NCBI RefSeq assembly: GCF_002113885.1
Contig: NW_018408440.1
Location: forward strand, 1,458,016-1,522,015
DNA from: Mizuhopecten yessoensis
Taxonomy: Eukaryota
Length of the DNA: 64,000 nt
Direction: 5' to 3'
In this document: positions 4,253-43,512 of the stretch, in pieces
How the letters are laid out: every line of letters starts with the position of its first letter
How positions within the stretch are numbered: the stretch's first letter is position 1
Notes under the pieces: model-generated
The model's input: the letters and a program-made list of their open reading frames with translations, nothing else
What the model was told of the DNA's origin: nothing
Databases searched by the model: none
Program-made: the position numbers and the translations under genes

Positions 4253-4830
4253 ATGTCGGCCCTCCTCGTGGTATGTATTTCCCTGTGTGTGGCTGTCCCG
4301 GCCGTTCATGGAAGTATCAACTCTGTCATGAGCCGGCTGTCGGACCGGATATTCCTGGACCAGAATACCCGGGATAGTCCAGGACATCCGCCTTTCTCTT
4401 GGAGCCACAATAAAGGACTCTACGGCACTGAGGTAAAACTAAACTTCCACGGGGAGCCGGAAATGGCGGTACTCCGGGAGGCGTTCTCGATTTATGACAA
4501 TAACATGTTTGCGACGGCCTGGATCACGGCGTGCTCACTTGAGACCACACTGTACGGGACGGGACCCATGACTATTCCCCTTATGATCGATTCCGCCGTG
4601 GAAGCAATCGGGAACTTCCACAACCGGAACTACAACTTCACCAACTCCATCATGACCTTCTGGCCCCAGGTTTACAACGCCACGACTCGGACATTCCAGA
4701 GTACTCCCTCTAACCTGCTGCAGCTATTACAACTCGCGGACACCTTCCCTGTTAAACTGATCGAAGACCTCATGAAGATATTTGGCCTGAAGGACATGGA
4801 GCAAGTCGTTGAGCATCTCATCCAAGAAAA
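4253..4830 (+). CDS. Secreted DxDD protein exon 1
   Basis: ATG 4253, signal peptide, donor AA|GTAGCT, phase 2. Confidence 0.85.
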
Positions 4831-7800
4831 GTAGCTATATAGGTTGGCATCGATATGAGGGGTAACATTTATCATTATTACCCGACTCTCTATTTAAGTG
4901 TATATGAAGTATTTTTGACTGTTTTAATAAAAATTCCCTGGAATAGACTGAAAACCCGTAAAATAATGTCAGGGTGCAACAGTCGACTGTCCGACTGTTG
5001 CACACTTACTGTTGCATGCGCGACAATTGTGCGCAGACAATTTCCCCGTCGGCGGCCCCACTCAAGCGTCTTTTTGATACAGATTTGTTTGTTGTCGTCT
5101 GGTGAAAATGGCGAATAACGGCAGATTTGAGGATGTTTCTGAGCAAGATTTGGAATTGCTTATGGAAAATAGGGACTCTCTTAGTACACAATTTTGGATA
5201 AATATTGTGCAGAGAAAGGTGTAATGATCGACGAAAGCTGCAGTAATGAAGAACTGAACGACTTTTTGTGTAGATTTTACGTAGAATTAAATCTTCTATC
5301 CTGTCATACAGTCATTTATCCTACCTAGCACAATTCAGGAAGTTTCTTAAATAGAGAGTCAGGTAATAAATCATTTGCCGGTTTCATTGGTACTGGGGGA
5401 ACAGTCAAATCCTTGACCCTCGGTAGCTACCTCGGGTCAATGATTTGACTGTTCCCCCAGTGCCAATGAAACAATTGTATACTGCATCGATTTGAGGGGT
5501 AACATTTATCACTGTTTTATTATTTCTGCTCTGAAGTCTCTATCGTCTTCCAAATTATCTGCTCTTGATTCTTACGTCATTTGTTTGTGTGAGTGACGTC
5601 ATCAATTTTTGAGAAAACGACGTAATTATCTCACACAAACTTATGACCTATATCAATCAATACCTGCTCACAAGAGAAGATAACTCTGCAATACGCAAAG
5701 ACGGGATATAGTATTTTCAATACTTTTTATTGTGACGTCATTTTGTGACGTTTTAAGAGGACACCTCAAAGTATTCAAATAATTGCCACCTGGAAGCAAT
5801 TTCATACGTTTATATGCCATTTTAGGCGGTTTTTATTTTCATAAAAATGAATGAATCAATCAAAATCATCGTTCAGTTAAAATTAATTTATATATATATA
5901 TATATTCCTTTATACTGGAATAGACTACCGTTACAACTTTGAGACCATACAAATTATGACGGCAACGATTAATAGGGTCATGGCATTCATAGCTCATACA
6001 AATGCTATCTGTATTTGGCAGGGTTATATTGTGACACTGTCATACAGAGGTAGATATTGGGTAATGACGCTTTTCAAGATCTGATGAATCTACGACAAAT
6101 ATTATCATGATGCAAATTTTGTTTCATCAATCCTACCAATTTTATCAGACACTTTCCTGTTACGTTCTCGAGTTCTTGAAATCGTTCAGTGACAAAGTTT
6201 CCAGGTACTTTTTAAATGGTCTAAACTTTAAAGTACATTTATGAAGCATATATTAGAAGGACCGTTACCAGAACACATTATACAGTAATAATTGGCACTT
6301 TCAGGGACATGTTTTCCCGCGCTTTCCATATCCCTCCTGACTTTGACGACACCTTTGTGAACCTTGGATTGGGAGCCCTGCTCAGAAATGCACAGGAATC
6401 ATATCCACAGTCATGGAAACAATGGCAGATACAAAACTCTAATGTGACATCAGCACTGCACGCGCTCCGGAAGTACGCCTATAGGCCGTCCTCAACTAAC
6501 CCGGATGTGAACACAATCGACCCGAGAACTTATTTTTACATGAGATCCTTTCTAAGCGAGCATCATGACGAAAATCTCGCGTTGGTGCCCACATGGGTAG
6601 GTACAGAGTTACTATTCCGTCTTTGCGTATTGCAGAGTTATCTTCTCTTGGGAGCAGGTATTGATTGTTACGTCATTGGTTTGTGGGAGAAAATTACGTC
6701 GTTTTCTCAAAAATTGATGACTTTACCCTCACAAACAAGTGACGTAACAATCAATACCGGCTCCCAAGAGAAGATAACTCTGCAATATGCAAAGACGGAA
6801 TATGGTAGTTGAGGGTAGAGGATCTCATTAGATAGTTGACAAGGTGAAGGCATCAGTTATTCTGCTGAAAAGAAACCATTGTATGGTGTATATTGTGTTG
6901 ATGTGAGGTAGTTGTTCATCAATAGAAACAACAAGCAACAATTAGGCGATGAACAGTTACACCATCAAAAATCACTTGGAACATTCATGAGGTCCTCATG
7001 TTCTATCTGAAACACATATCAAGGCCCAATAACCACATGCTTTCAATAAATAAATAAATATGGATTTGTGATACAATTCCGAGCATGTTTCGTAGTCTTG
7101 CGTGTTTTACCTTGCGTTCTCCATTAATATGTTGTCAACATTGTTTAAATCTCTGGTTCAAGTTGTCATGTTTTTTGTTGTTGTTTATGCTGTGGTGCTT
7201 TGTTACCCTTCTTTGTTGATATTTGATTATTGACAACACGTGTGTCCACAGATCCAGAATACGCGCGAGGCTATGCAGGGTGACAAAAAGGGCGTGTCAA
7301 TGCCTTTTTCCGTCAACAATGTTGACGTCACTGTTGCTGCCAACGCCATTTATGGTTTAACATCCGGGCTCCTGTCGAACATCATCGATGACGTCGAGTT
7401 TGACGCCGACCTACAGGTTTGTGATTGACTCCACCATTAAATTGTGTGATTTGCTTACCATGCAATCTTATCGTGGTTACATAAAGATGGCAATCGATAC
7501 TGATTACTGCATTTGATGTAACGGACGTATCGTTGTTAGGTAATTCGTCCGTCTCGCCGATACCCTGCTTTATACTGTATTATGTTTATGCGTTTCATTC
7601 TGGTACATGTTATATGCTACACTGCTGTAGATAACCTTATTCATATATAGAACACACGAACATTTTAAACAGAGAACATAATGCATATGTCTCTTAATGA
7701 TATATGATTTTATTTATTATATAACGGAATATCTCGTCCTTTACTGATGTACGTAAATGATCCACAGAGAATATACCTGAACACATCGTCACTTATCGCC

Positions 7801-10211
7801 CACGAGCTGTCATACAACTTTTCCTCGAGGCCTGATCTTGCCCTCACGTATTATCCGTCCAAACATGAATGCTACTGGTTCGTGGCTCGAACCTTATCGC
7901 TAATGCAAAGATATCTTCTTAACAACAACGAGACCGACACACTTCCGTTTCCGGTAAGTAATACCAGTATACATGTACATACTTTATCCCGTTTAGTTAA
8001 TTTAGTTTTTCCCCACAAATTTTCATTATTTCTCATAGTCAACTTGCCGAAATTAGAATTCAAAATATCAACATAATCTGGCGTTAATCAAGAGTAAAAT
8101 CTTCATGTCGACTTAAGGTGATGAACACGGTCAAACTCGCGTTTGAGAATACTCTGAAACGGGAAGTAACTCCAGAGATCCTAAAGGCTTCAAAGGATGA
8201 TTTTGAAGGTCGGATATACTGGGACAATTTCCTGGGGGACGGGGACATCAACTCTGACAACTCGTCTGTGGTAAGTTTGTGTCGTATACTAGGTCGTTTA
8301 CCTTGACAATGTTCAATGTGTTAGGAGTTCTTGTGTTAACTTTTAAATGAGTTAAAGTTAATTTTGTGAGGCATTAGTTCAAAATAATAACTTTAACCTT
8401 GTGCAACAAGATATAAGCATGTTAACACTGACCCTTTGCCATTTTTGTGATATCTCATTACGTTACCTTTGACATTACGTGTCATCACTATAAACCTTGA
8501 CATTGTCTGTCCTAAGGTCCGTGCCGAGGACCGAATTTTCACCACTGCCATGGTGGTCAATACCTTAATTGACGTATGGACCGTGTACAACCAATCAGCA
8601 TTCAGGCTGGAATGGTTACCAGGTAACCAACCACTCCCAGCTATAATAGCTCATTTGTTATGACATGAACATCTATATGGTTCCCGACACTCTTGCATTA
8701 TATATATATTTATAGTATAAAAAAAATGTTTTGCACCTAATTGTTAAATCATAGACAGTCTTCTCCACATAACGTTAAATAACTAATTAATATAACTAAT
8801 AACTATATGACTTTTTCTTCCAACTTATCGATGCACGTGACAAGGTTTGACTTTTGTTGCTAGGTGTCTCTCCCCAACTTAACGACACAATCAAACGAGC
8901 GGTGGCCTGGCTCACTGACTTCTCCCTCGGCCCTACGTACAAACCCTGGAACACGTTCTTCTCTGGCTCTGGCAAGGGATTAAAGGTTAGTCATCTATTG
9001 AAGGTTAATATTCAGGGTCATTATCCTACTTCAACGGTAAGCAATCTAAAGGGAGTAGGATGTAAGAAGATAATTAACTTGCTCTGTATTGATAGAATGC
9101 ACGAGGTTTCACTTCGTTTCAACATCTCACTCATTTAAAATGACTTCACTGGTAATGGGGGCCTTTTTTGGAATCGTCGGCACTTTCCGAAAACTAGAAA
9201 ACAAAATTTCTCGTTTACGAAAAGTGCCGACGGTTCTCGATAAATAACTTATCGTCAATTATTGTATGAAGGAAAGATAACCCCTGTCTAATTCCGTGCT
9301 TATGTTAATCTCTTGTTTCCAAGTCAGTCTTAGTAATTCACATTTAGTAGTCTTCCCGTTGTCAACTGTGATCTAAGTGTATTGCGCAGGCGCAAGCTCC
9401 AAATTGTAGCATATCTCATAGGTATCTCATAGGTAAGACATCAATGAAACGTCTAAGGCTTGTAATGATGTTTTGTATCATCATTTCGTTAATTGGTTGA
9501 TGTAAGAGGTATCTAACATTATATTGTATCAGGATGTCTCGACTGGAACAGCCACATAAGTATGTATACCTATTGTTATAGTTAATTAAAAGGACGAATA
9601 AAACTTGTATGCATGATCTTTCTAGTGCACGTTTAGCCTAATTCTTAAAACTATTTAAAATTTGGGCGTTAAACACTTCTGCTGATAGCTTAACACGCGG
9701 ACTGGGATCGATTGATTCGGTATCAAGCACAGGAATATAAAGAAATTACTTCGTAAATAACAATATTTCAACATAAAACTGTCCGACATTTGAAGTTGAT
9801 CGAGTGTCCTCGGATCACAAATATGATTACACTAGATTTGACCATAAAAACAGCGAAATTAGTCTCTTATTTTTGCATTGATAAATAACAATGTTGTTTC
9901 ACGTATTTTTGCAGAGCCTGCCGTTTTGGTACCCTGCCAACAGAATCGAGTACATGAACGGAACCGCAGTAAACTCCTCAGTTATCCCCCATGGCGTCAA
10001 CTTTCTCATAGGGATTTCAGGCTACGTGCCCGATGAGAAGTACAACGCCATGTTGAAGGTGCCCCATTTCGGAGTTATGACGCCCACGGACTTTCCTGGA
10101 TTCAATGACCCTACGGAACCTCACGGGTTTTTCCCGTTCTGGTCGTCGGATTCTTATACATATTCTGCCACTTTGATGGCGCTGTCTAAATATACTAATA
10201 TAAAGCAATGA
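4253..10211 (+). CDS. Uncharacterised secreted glycoprotein, 632 aa, 8 exons; candidate class II terpene cyclase / prenyltransferase-like (alpha/alpha) barrel
   Basis: join(4253..4830,6305..6596,7252..7416,7768..7953,8118..8270,8517..8622,8864..8985,9915..10211) = 1899 nt; all introns GT-AG and phases consistent; N-terminal signal peptide MSALLVVCISLCVAVPAVHG; at least 10 N-x-S/T sequons; DxDD motif. Gene structure is well supported; function is inference. Confidence 0.88.
4890..5480 (+). mobile_element. Non-autonomous Crypton-like (tyrosine recombinase/DUF3504 N-terminus) remnant with terminal hairpin
   Basis: 5108: MANNGRFEDVSEQDLELLMENRDSLST, then after a frameshift KYCAE...NEELNDFLCRFYVEL, resembling Crypton/DUF3504-family N-termini; ~92-nt hairpin at 5381-5472. 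Confidence 0.5.
5555..5708 (-). mobile_element. Partial MITE, inverted copy of 6613-6802
   Basis: Shares the TIR AAGAGAAGATAACTCTGCAATACGCAAAGACGG and, in opposite orientation, the internal CATCAATTTTTGAGAAAACGACGTAATT. Confidence 0.75.
6305..6596 (+). CDS. Secreted DxDD protein exon 2 (PPDFDDT motif)
   Basis: TTTCAG| acceptor, TGG|GTAGGT donor. Confidence 0.88.
6613..6802. mobile_element. ~190-bp MITE with ~43-bp or longer TIRs
   Basis: TATTCCGTCTTTGCGTATTGCAGAGTTATCTTCTCTTGGGAGC ... GCTCCCAAGAGAAGATAACTCTGCAATATGCAAAGACGGAATA. Confidence 0.85.
7252..7416 (+). CDS. Secreted DxDD protein exon 3 (NNVDVTVAAN)
   Basis: CCACAG| ... CAG|GTTTGT, phase 0-0. Confidence 0.88.
7768..7953 (+). CDS. 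Secreted DxDD protein exon 4 (YYPS)
   Basis: CCACAG| ... CCG|GTAAGT. Confidence 0.88.
8118..8270 (+). CDS. Secreted DxDD protein exon 5
   Basis: TTAAG| ... GTG|GTAAGT. Confidence 0.85.
8517..8622 (+). CDS. Secreted DxDD protein exon 6
   Basis: CCTAAG| ... CAG|GTAACC, phase 0-1. Confidence 0.85.
8864..8985 (+). CDS. Secreted DxDD protein exon 7
   Basis: TGCTAG| ... AAG|GTTAGT, phase 1-0. Confidence 0.85.
9915..10211 (+). CDS. Secreted DxDD protein exon 8 (terminal)
   Basis: TTGCAG| ... TGA 10209-10211. Confidence 0.88.
   Translation, partial: SLPFWYPANRIEYMNGTAVNSSVIPHGVNFLIGISGYVPDEKYNAMLKVPHFGVMTPTDFPGFNDPTEPHGFFPFWSSDSYTYSATLMALSKYTNIKQ

Positions 10212-15702: not shown

Positions 15703-43512
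<27,810 letters not shown>

What the first reader, a model, noticed from the sequence alone, without database searches (positions are those of the whole stretch)
4253..10211. Secreted animal protein with the motif series of a DxDD class II terpene cyclase
Seen: signal peptide, many N-glycosylation sequons and, in order, DNNMFATAWI, FW, IPPDFDDT (DFDDT at 6339-6353), TW, NNVDVTVAANA, YYPS..CYWFVAR, TTAM, RAVAWL, W..FF and FWSS..T.SA.LMAL. Established: the catalytic acid motif of squalene-hopene cyclase and other class II terpene cyclases is DxDD (PDxDDTA). From memory, the stand-alone beta-domains of bacterial and fungal drimenol-synthase-type enzymes carry D.VV..N.L and YYPS motifs. Inference: this is a single-domain class II cyclase-like enzyme routed to the secretory pathway, distinct from animal lanosterol synthase (DCTAE). 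It would be an unusual route to terpenoid or lipid chemistry in a mollusc. Seven introns show it is a resident gene, not contamination.
Basis: partly seen in the sequence, partly recalled or inferred. Interest (0 to 1): 0.8.

Follow-up and report, generated by a model that had tools for sequence, protein, structure and literature searches.

The report
Secreted terpene-cyclase-like enzyme, scallop gene
This expressed scallop gene encodes a secreted, sugar-coated protein whose predicted shape and acid motif match the enzymes that fold squalene-like lipids into rings; it belongs to an unstudied family found from amoebae to marine invertebrates, and what it acts on is unknown.

Summary
It is identical to RefSeq "uncharacterized protein LOC110459787" of Mizuhopecten yessoensis. 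One RNA contig carries all seven splice joints.

The AlphaFold model (pLDDT 93.6) is a single (alpha/alpha)6 barrel. Its ten best PDB matches are all class II terpene cyclases (Z 27.0-22.5); GH105 and GH88 follow (Z 20.8, 18.7). A model starting at I202 puts D207, the middle Asp of D205-F-D207-D208, on the general acid of drimenol synthase (D323), SsDMS (D303), squalene-hopene cyclase (D376) and human oxidosqualene cyclase (D455). D205 and D207 are invariant in 63 family members.

Limits:
- No sequence method links the family to cyclases (no Pfam hit; hhalign probability 3.5% or less).
- D207 also falls on an active-site Asp of GH88/GH105.
- No activity or substrate is shown.

The family is not mollusc-specific. 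It occurs in molluscs, rotifers, amphioxus, a starfish, a sponge, Amoebozoa and Discoba, and its tree follows organismal relationships. I found no paper on it, and the scan had not noted it before.

The parts
4253..4830 (+). Exon 1. Holds the start codon, the signal peptide (4253-4312, residues 1-20) and the first inner helix with invariant D82 and F86 (DNNMFATAWI = 4496-4525). Also holds the FWPQ strand with W137.
   Evidence: Joint 4830>6305 is seen in RNA contigs.
6305..6596 (+). Exon 2. Holds the IPPDFDDT motif. D205 = 6339-6341, D207 (proposed general acid) = 6345-6347, D208 = 6348-6350. Also holds invariant D265, R267, T289 and W290.
   Evidence: RNA joint 6596>7252.
7252..7416 (+). Exon 3. 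Holds NNVDVTVAANA (7315-7347), the third inner helix, with N313 and V318 invariant and D315 at least 90% conserved.
7768..7953 (+). Exon 4. Holds RPDLALTYYPS..CYWFVAR (YYPS = 7849-7860), the fourth inner helix. This exon is skipped in predicted isoform X2 (P0224).
8118..8270 (+). Exon 5. Holds a long outer helix and the FLGDGD loop.
8517..8622 (+). Exon 6. Holds the EDRIFTTAM motif with invariant D463; this is the fifth inner helix.
8864..8985 (+). Exon 7. Holds the outer helix RAVAWL and the NTFFSGSGKG loop with invariant F525 and F526.
9915..10211 (+). Exon 8. Holds the conserved NGT sequon (N549, kept in 51 of 63 members), the FPFWSS..YTYSATLMAL sixth inner helix with invariant W610, and the stop codon at 10209-10211.

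Best explanation
LOC110459787 encodes a soluble, N-glycosylated protein of the secretory pathway (secreted or lysosomal). It is a single-domain, beta-only structural relative of class II terpene cyclases.

Six conserved motifs sit at the N-terminal ends of the six inner helices of an (alpha/alpha)6 barrel. About 300 family-specific residues are inserted between the helices.

Proposed mechanism (inferred, not shown): D207, the middle Asp of D205-F-D207-D208-T, acts as a general acid, backed by neighbouring invariant Asp residues. It would protonate a C=C bond or epoxide of a lipophilic, probably isoprenoid, substrate held in a cavity lined by invariant aromatic residues (F86, W137, W290, Y373, Y374, F525, F526, W610). 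That would start a cationic cyclisation or hydration. The insertions would stand in for the missing gamma domain as a lid.

The substrate is unknown. Given the location, it would have to be reachable from the lumen or outside the cell, for example membrane or dietary polyprenyl lipids or meroterpenoid precursors.

The gene is one of at least four paralogues in the scallop. It is a vertically inherited member of an ancient eukaryotic family.
For: Shown:
- The gene is intact, spliced and transcribed.
- The model is confident: pLDDT 93.6, pTM 0.93.
- An exhaustive structural search puts class II cyclases in all ten top places. Examples: 9mhs drimenol synthase Z 27.0, rmsd 2.7 A over 296 residues, 15% identity; 1gsz SHC Z 24.2; 6sbb monodomain MstE Z 23.1; 1w6k OSC Z 22.9. 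The first non-cyclase scores 20.8.
- The model of residues 202-632 (pLDDT 94.3) aligns its first residue to 318 of 9mhs, 298 of 8zg0, 371 of 1gsz and 450 of 1w6k.
- In each case the sixth residue, D207, then falls on the known acid: D323 and D303 (PMC12232559), D455 (PMC4191879), and D376 (established knowledge).
- D205 and D207 are invariant and D208 is at least 90% conserved. The variants are DxDC and DxDT only. [quoted passage not shown]
- A beta-only architecture has precedent in MstE.
- A signal-like N-terminus is present in 61 of 63 members, the NGT549 sequon in 51 of 63, and there is no internal membrane segment.

Leads only:
- ESM Atlas nearest named clusters by features are SQHop_cyclase_C / AstC-like_C, at a score of 0.83.
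- By shape, the nearest are two bacterial clusters of about 465 aa, one auto-named 'putative squalene cyclase C-terminal domain' protein, with about 400 residues aligned and TM 0.73-0.76 by the row.
Against: - No sequence-based method links the family to cyclases. There is no Pfam hit in any of the 63 members. A PDB profile search found nothing. hhalign against squalene-hopene cyclase alignments gave probability 3.5% or less.
- Foldseek alone gave no match better than E = 0.006, and its weak hits mix glycosidases with cyclases.
- The margin over GH105 is moderate: Z 22.5-27 against 20.8 for the full model, and overlapping in the fragment search (cyclases 17.0-13.5, GH105 15.3-13.7).
- D207 also aligns to Asp75/Asp88 of GH105 and GH88.
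- The residue mapping rests on the first aligned pair plus an assumed gap-free run of six residues.
- Known class II cyclases work in the cytosol or on its membranes, where prenyl diphosphates and squalene are made. A luminal or extracellular cyclase has no known substrate supply.
- Many conserved residues are polar (Asp, Asn, Arg), which would also suit a sugar or phosphate ligand.
- I had no model coordinates, so 'lines the cavity' is inferred from helix positions and not measured.
Confidence: 0.5

Rival explanations
1. It is a carbohydrate-active six-hairpin enzyme of the digestive or lysosomal system. For example, it could be a vinyl-ether hydratase like GH88/GH105, which also begins by protonating a C=C bond, or a new glycosidase or lyase family acting on algal or bacterial polysaccharides.
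For: - The protein goes through the secretory pathway and has conserved glycosylation sites.
- The family is found in phagotrophic protists and filter-feeding or grazing invertebrates, and has several paralogues per mollusc.
- GH105 and GH88 are the next-best structural matches (Z 20.8 and 18.7; 15.3-12.8 in the fragment search).
- D207 aligns to Asp75 of 4wu0 and Asp88 of YteR and UGL, which are active-site residues.
- Many invariant residues are Asp, Asn or Arg.
Against: - All ten best full-length matches are cyclases, with higher identity (11-15% against 5-11%).
- The GH88/GH105 proton donor works with a conserved His (His176/189/193; PMC4528949). No His is conserved anywhere in the 63-member alignment.
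- There is no Pfam Glyco_hydro_88 hit, and hhalign against a GH88 alignment gave probability 3.5% or less.
- The five-residue D-x-D-D-T string is the cyclase signature.
Confidence: 0.27
2. It is a non-catalytic binding or carrier protein built on the toroid fold, as the thioester domains of complement or transcobalamin are, or a pseudoenzyme.
For: - Toroid-fold binders appear among the matches (complement TED Z 16-17, transcobalamin Z 16.5).
- One scallop paralogue, on contig C690, has lost the acid (PPDFGST), so acid-free copies can persist.
Against: - A cluster of invariant Asp residues and aromatic residues at the inner-helix ends is kept from Discoba to molluscs. This is the pattern of an active site.
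- The window's own copy keeps every invariant residue.
Confidence: 0.13
3. It is a bacterial contaminant in the assembly, or a recent horizontal acquisition by molluscs.
For: - The closest solved structures are bacterial.
- The nearest predicted shapes outside the family are bacterial.
Against: - The gene has seven spliceosomal introns, all confirmed by RNA.
- Transposon-derived ORFs typical of animal genomes lie elsewhere in the window.
- The family tree follows organismal relationships: Mollusca form one clade (SH-aLRT 99), animals one clade (98), and Amoebozoa and Discoba lie outside.
- No sequence homologue was found in 401 sampled Bacteroidota genomes or among the named hits.
Confidence: 0.02

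Closest known systems
Class II cyclase domain of drimenol synthase AsDMS (PDB 9mhs) and drimenyl diphosphate synthase SsDMS (8zg0)
   Same: - 9mhs is the best structural match: Z 27.0, rmsd 2.7 A, 296 residues, 15% identity.
- D207 falls on general acid D323 of AsDMS and on D303 of SsDMS.
- The third motif position is variable in both (DXDT in AsDMS; DxDC and DxDT in some family members).
   Different: - There is no detectable sequence homology.
- There is no fused HAD phosphatase domain or gamma domain.
- The protein carries about 300 extra residues as insertions.
- It has a signal peptide and N-glycans.
- It is eukaryotic, with introns.
- Its substrate is unknown.
MstE, monodomain (beta-only) class II meroterpenoid cyclase of Scytonema (PDB 6sbb), and the small cyclase-like proteins 8paj and 6ij1
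   Same: - They share the single (alpha/alpha)6 barrel without a gamma domain: Z 23.1, 24.3 and 23.4, with 311-325 residues aligned.
- The acid motif lies at the same helix end (fragment start aligns to 104 in 6sbb).
- MstE shows that a beta-only cyclase can work, using a loop as a lid (PMC12324236).
   Different: - MstE is about 350 aa, bacterial and cytosolic. This protein is 632 aa, secreted and glycosylated.
- No sequence similarity is detectable.
- Any lid function of the insertions is conjecture.
Squalene-hopene cyclase and oxidosqualene (lanosterol) cyclase (PDB 1gsz, 1w6k; Pfam PF13243/PF13249)
   Same: - The beta-domain fold is shared: Z 24.2 and 22.9.
- D207 falls on D376 and D455.
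- Helix-by-helix motif echoes, which are inference only: D82 / WD(T); D-x-D-D-T / D-V-D-D-T-A; x-D-V-T / (A)DVT(A); FPFW / FPRVF.
- DxDC paralogues echo the D-C-T of the oxidosqualene cyclases.
   Different: - There is no gamma domain and there are no QW repeats.
- There is no Pfam or InterPro match, and hhalign probability is 3.5% or less.
- The cellular compartment differs.
GH88 / GH105 unsaturated glucuronyl / rhamnogalacturonyl hydrolases (PDB 1vd5, 1nc5, 4wu0, 4ce7)
   Same: - The fold is shared: Z 18.7-20.8.
- D207 aligns to the active-site Asp88/Asp75.
- Their chemistry also starts with an Asp protonating a C=C bond (PMC4528949).
- They are extracytoplasmic enzymes of polysaccharide digestion.
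   Different: - Scores and identity are lower.
- The catalytic His partner is not conserved here.
- There is no PF07470 match.
- The DxDD string is not their signature.

Membership tests
Class II terpene cyclase (beta-domain superfamily) | The beta domain is an (alpha/alpha)6 barrel. [quoted passage not shown] | tested here: met
   The AF2 model has pLDDT 93.6. The ten best PDB matches are class II cyclases, Z 27.0-22.5, aligned from the N-terminal to the C-terminal helix. The protein is beta-only, like MstE.
Class II terpene cyclase (beta-domain superfamily) | A DxDD-type motif with a strictly conserved middle Asp, placed where the general acid sits. | tested here: met
   D205 and D207 are invariant and D208 is at least 90% conserved in 63 members. 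Variants keep the middle Asp. The fragment alignment puts D207 on D323 (9mhs), D303 (8zg0), D376 (1gsz) and D455 (1w6k). Caveat: the mapping is read from the first aligned pair plus five residues.
Class II terpene cyclase (beta-domain superfamily) | Sequence-level membership (Pfam SQHop_cyclase_N/C or Prenyltrans; InterPro squalene cyclase). | tested here: not met
   There is no Pfam hit at E up to 10 for the exons, or for any of the 63 members beyond scattered chance hits. hhalign against SHC alignments A2 and A3 gave probability 3.5% or less. The PDB profile search found nothing.
Class II terpene cyclase (beta-domain superfamily) | A hydrophobic, aromatic-lined, water-excluding cavity over the acid. 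| tested here: inconclusive
   Eight invariant aromatic residues lie at or near inner-helix ends. I had no coordinates with which to measure the cavity or to test the lid role of the insertions.
Class II terpene cyclase (beta-domain superfamily) | Catalysis of protonation-initiated cyclisation of an isoprenoid. | not testable with these tools
   This needs expression and assay.
Oxidosqualene / lanosterol cyclase | Beta-gamma didomain, a D-C-T-A-E acid motif and QW repeats. | tested here: not met
   The protein has a single domain and DFDDT instead of DCTAE. There is no PF13243/PF13249 match.
GH88 / GH105 unsaturated uronyl hydrolases | A Pfam Glyco_hydro_88 (PF07470) match. | tested here: not met
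   None of the 63 members hits it. hhalign against a 22-sequence GH88 alignment gave probability 3.5% or less.
GH88 / GH105 unsaturated uronyl hydrolases | A catalytic Asp (143/149) working with a conserved His (189/193), plus Asp88 (PMC4528949). | tested here: not met
   The Asp88 equivalent is present (D207). No His is invariant or at least 90% conserved anywhere in alignment A1. The position of the Asp143/149 equivalent could not be mapped.

The most novel reading that the evidence does not exclude
This is an ancient eukaryotic family, possibly as old as the last common ancestor of Discoba and Amorphea. Its members are working class II terpene cyclases inside the secretory or endolysosomal system, and the family has been missed because no sequence profile detects it. 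In animals it would be a candidate for the unidentified protonation-type cyclases behind the drimane and meroterpenoid chemistry of molluscs and sponges. In phagotrophs it could process isoprenoid lipids of ingested prey.
Probability: 0.3. Interest if true: 0.9.

Novelty: new variant of a known kind. Interest (0 to 1): 0.75.

Why it matters
Animals are known to have one class II cyclase, lanosterol synthase. Screens for more, such as the InterPro-based screen of 12 sponges in PMC13483135, cannot see this family because it matches no profile.

If active, it would be the first secreted or luminal, glycosylated, beta-only class II cyclase. It would also be the first such family shared by protists and animals. 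That would put protonation-initiated terpenoid chemistry in a new cellular compartment and give concrete candidate genes for marine-invertebrate terpenoids.

If it proves to be a carbohydrate enzyme instead, it is a new six-hairpin family. Its Asp at the cyclase acid position would then tie cyclases and vinyl-ether hydratases together mechanistically.

Either way, a conserved family without a Pfam model gains a testable active site, D207.

Tried and rejected
- Pfam on each exon, on ten homologues and on all 63 members: nothing.
- PDB sequence search with exons 1 and 2, and with the family profile: only chance-level hits, including weak EF-hand-like rows at E of 0.15 or more.
- Foldseek against the PDB: no match better than E = 0.006. 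The weak hits are a mixed bag of toroids.
- hhalign of the family against full-length and beta-domain SHC alignments, also with the large insertions cut out, and against a GH88 alignment: all gave probability 3.5% or less. With greedy settings DFDDT aligns to DVDDT, but without statistical support, so I do not count it.
- The family profile found no homologue in 401 sampled Bacteroidota genomes. The one weak hit (L162, E = 0.0055) is a TPR/sensor-kinase-like ORF and was rejected.
- A search of 101 Myxococcota genomes for short cyclase-like genes gave mostly full-length cyclases and was not pursued.
- Literature searches by locus names and by concept found no paper on this family.
- The Moosmann et al. 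paper on MstE is not held, so MstE's acid residue number is not cited.
- Contamination and recent horizontal transfer are rejected.
Full report
**Method note**

The joined, spliced protein was never typed into or sent to a search tool. I built it only inside a local script, to check the reading frame and compare it with database proteins. Searches were made exon by exon by reference. After they used P0173, a database protein returned that proved identical to the model.

**1. The observation**

The stretch 4253-10211 holds eight exons on the + strand: 4253-4830, 6305-6596, 7252-7416, 7768-7953, 8118-8270, 8517-8622, 8864-8985 and 9915-10211. All seven introns are GT..AG. The 1899-nt reading frame gives 632 residues.

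There are 11 N-x-S/T sequons and a typical signal sequence. Apart from two Cys in the signal peptide there are only two others.

The protein equals NCBI 'uncharacterized protein LOC110459787 isoform X1' of the scallop Mizuhopecten yessoensis. The assembly size and contig count also fit that species (the match to the species is from my own knowledge).

RNA evidence: runs from five studies hold about the exonic third of the stretch. A single 2029-nt RNA-Seq contig carries all seven joints as modelled. Depth was low in the two raw-read runs laid, so expression level and tissue are not established.

**2. The family**

Exon 1 alone finds 200 cluster representatives at E of 0.001 or better, many of them 620-660 aa.

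Named members come from:
- every major mollusc class, amphioxus, a starfish, a sponge and rotifers;
- dictyostelids, Mastigella and Balamuthia (Amoebozoa);
- Naegleria, Willaertia, Percolomonas and Andalucia (Discoba).

All are annotated as uncharacterised. None has a Pfam domain.

A maximum-likelihood tree of 43 named members follows organismal relationships. Mollusca form one clade (SH-aLRT 99) and animals form one clade (98). The protists lie outside, and the window's protein sits among pectinids inside the bivalves. The gene is therefore old and vertically inherited. It is neither a mollusc novelty nor a transfer.

The scallop genome has at least three further copies:
- Two tandem copies on contig C76727 keep PPDFDDT.
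- A divergent copy on C690 reads PPDFGST, so it has lost the acid.

**3. Conservation**

In a 63-member alignment spanning animals and protists, the invariant residues are G55, D82, F86, W137, N154, P203, D205, D207, D265, R267, T289, W290, N313, V318, Y373, Y374, P375, D463, F525, F526 and W610. D208, D315 and many others are at least 90% conserved. No His is conserved.

Among 153 full-length members the motif is D-x-D-D almost throughout. The only exceptions seen are D-x-D-C (four lineage-specific paralogues) and D-x-D-T. The middle Asp is kept while the third position varies.

[quoted passage not shown] From established knowledge, oxidosqualene cyclases have D-C-T.

A signal-like N-terminus occurs in 61 of 63 members. 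The NGT549 sequon is kept in 51 of 63. There is no internal membrane segment and no ER-retention ending. Secretory routing is therefore a family trait.

**4. Fold**

The AlphaFold2 model built on the family alignment is confident: mean pLDDT 93.6, pTM 0.93. Its helices fall into twelve barrel helices plus insertions. The six conserved motifs each begin one of the six inner helices (the helix assignment is my reading of the DSSP string).

Foldseek against the PDB finds only weak hits, the best at E = 0.006. All are alpha/alpha toroids.

The exhaustive aligner is clearer. Ranks 1-10 are all class II terpene cyclases:

| PDB | Protein | Z |
|---|---|---|
| 9mhs | drimenol synthase | 27.0 |
| 5bp8 | ent-CPP synthase | 24.5 |
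| 8paj | small cyclase-like protein | 24.3 |
| 1gsz | squalene-hopene cyclase | 24.2 |
| 7xkx | Tpn2 | 23.4 |
| 6ij1 | small cyclase-like protein | 23.4 |
| 6sbb | MstE | 23.1 |
| 6vpt | Rv3377c | 23.1 |
| 1w6k | human OSC | 22.9 |
| 8zg0 | SsDMS | 22.5 |

These matches have 11-15% identity and run from the first to the last barrel helix. GH105 (20.8) and GH88 (18.7) come next, followed by a long tail of glycosidases, epimerases and thioester domains at 18 or below.

Only about 300-346 of the 632 residues align, and no second barrel is matched. The protein is thus a beta-only barrel with large insertions.

In the ESM Atlas the nearest shapes outside the family are two bacterial clusters of about 465 aa. 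One is auto-named a putative squalene-cyclase C-terminal-domain protein. They align over about 400 residues, with TM 0.73-0.76 normalised by the row. They may be closer relatives but could not be retrieved.

**5. Is the motif in the catalytic place?**

I modelled residues 202-632 separately (pLDDT 94.3) so that the first aligned pair would report where I202 lands. The result:

| PDB | I202 aligns to | D207 (five residues on) falls on | Source for the acid |
|---|---|---|---|
| 9mhs | 318 | D323 | general acid, PMC12232559 |
| 8zg0 | 298 | D303 | general acid, PMC12232559 |
| 1gsz | 371 | D376 | established knowledge |

I202 also aligns to 308 (5bp8), 290 (6vpt) and 104 (6sbb).

Four independent agreements at the same offset are hard to get by chance. 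Formally, though, the mapping assumes no gap in the first six aligned residues.

**6. The complication**

The same test puts D207 on Asp75 of the GH105 enzyme 4wu0 (start 70). It also puts D207 on Asp88 of YteR (1nc5, start 83) and of UGL (1vd5, start 83).

These are recognised active-site residues. In those enzymes, however, the proton donor is another Asp (130/143/149) working with a His (PMC4528949). These hydrolases also start catalysis by protonating a C=C bond.

In the fragment search the cyclases and GH105 overlap in score (17.0-13.5 against 15.3-13.7). The structural preference for cyclases is therefore real but not overwhelming.

Against GH88/GH105 membership:
- no His is conserved;
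- there is no PF07470 hit;
- identity is lower.

**7. What sequence methods say**

They show no link to cyclases or any other known family. Pfam, the PDB profile search and hhalign against cyclase and GH88 alignments built here from bacterial genomes all fail. The assignment therefore rests on predicted structure plus motif position and conservation.

**8. Most likely working**

Shown:
- an expressed, conserved, secretory-pathway glycoprotein;
- a beta-only class II-cyclase-like barrel;
- an invariant D-x-D at the general-acid position.

Inferred:
- D207 is a general acid that protonates an alkene or epoxide.
- The invariant aromatics line the cavity and would stabilise cations.
- The insertions act as a lid.
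- The substrate is a lipid reachable from the lumen or outside.

I put about 0.5 on a cyclase-type, isoprenoid-directed mechanism. I put about 0.27 on a carbohydrate-directed six-hairpin enzyme, about 0.13 on a non-catalytic binder, and about 0.02 on contamination or recent transfer.

The distribution in phagotrophic protists and in filter-feeding or grazing invertebrates, together with the secretory routing, would fit a digestive or lysosomal role under either enzymatic reading.

**9. Novelty**

No paper was found on this family. A 2026 survey of sponge class II synthases relied on the InterPro squalene-cyclase signature (PMC13483135), which this family does not carry. The scan's own notes hold nothing on it.

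I class it as a new variant of a known kind. The fold and the acid motif are those of class II cyclases. The compartment, the size, the insertions, the phyletic range and the lack of any sequence signature are new.

Noticed in passing
window 6613-6802 (intron 2) and 5565-5716 (intron 1): A roughly 190-bp element resembling a miniature inverted-repeat transposon (81-nt arms, 91% complementary) starts 17 nt after exon 2's donor site. A partial copy lies in intron 1. RNA depth over both is thousands of times that of the exons, with many variant letters, so the reads come from other copies elsewhere in the genome.
   Followed up: partly
window 5381-5472: A perfect-spacing palindrome with 46-nt arms, 91% complementary and no spacer, lies in intron 1.
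   Followed up: no
G000:C690:2106121-2106405 (L190) and C690:2109123-2109440 (L004): A divergent scallop paralogue reads PPDFGST where the family has PPDFDDT. Both the middle and the third Asp are lost. It is a possible pseudoenzyme or pseudogene.
   Followed up: partly
P0054, P0137, P0231, P0233 (Elysia, unnamed, Solemya, Bradybaena paralogues); P0046: Some paralogues carry D-x-D-C-T or D-x-D-T instead of D-x-D-D-T. The D-C-T version mirrors the oxidosqualene-cyclase form of the acid motif.
   Followed up: partly
window 7417-8117 (exon 4 skipping): RefSeq isoform X2 (P0224, 570 aa) is the same protein without exon 4 (62 aa, the YYPS inner helix). No RNA joint 7416>8118 appeared in the four runs laid, so this isoform is unsupported here.
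   Followed up: partly
window 5358 > 6301: One contig of run X1 (depth 14) joins 5358 to about 6301-6305 with GT..AG ends. This suggests an occasional alternative upstream exon inside intron 1 spliced to exon 2.
   Followed up: no
whole genome G000: An exon-by-exon search with Pfam SQHop_cyclase_C found no match in the scallop assembly, not even a first-look candidate. Either a canonical lanosterol synthase is absent, or its exons are too short to detect this way.
   Followed up: no
window 37438-40677, 34530-35141, 28362-28862: The window holds a 1079-aa reverse-transcriptase ORF (LINE-like), a second RT fragment and a Tc3-type transposase fragment. There are no terpenoid-pathway neighbours, so there is no gene cluster.
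   Followed up: partly
ESM Atlas clusters (no ids returned): Two bacterial clusters of about 465 aa (Bacteroidota, Hydrogenedentota) without Pfam domains align to the model over about 400 residues. That is more than any solved cyclase, so they may share some of the family's insertions.
   Followed up: partly
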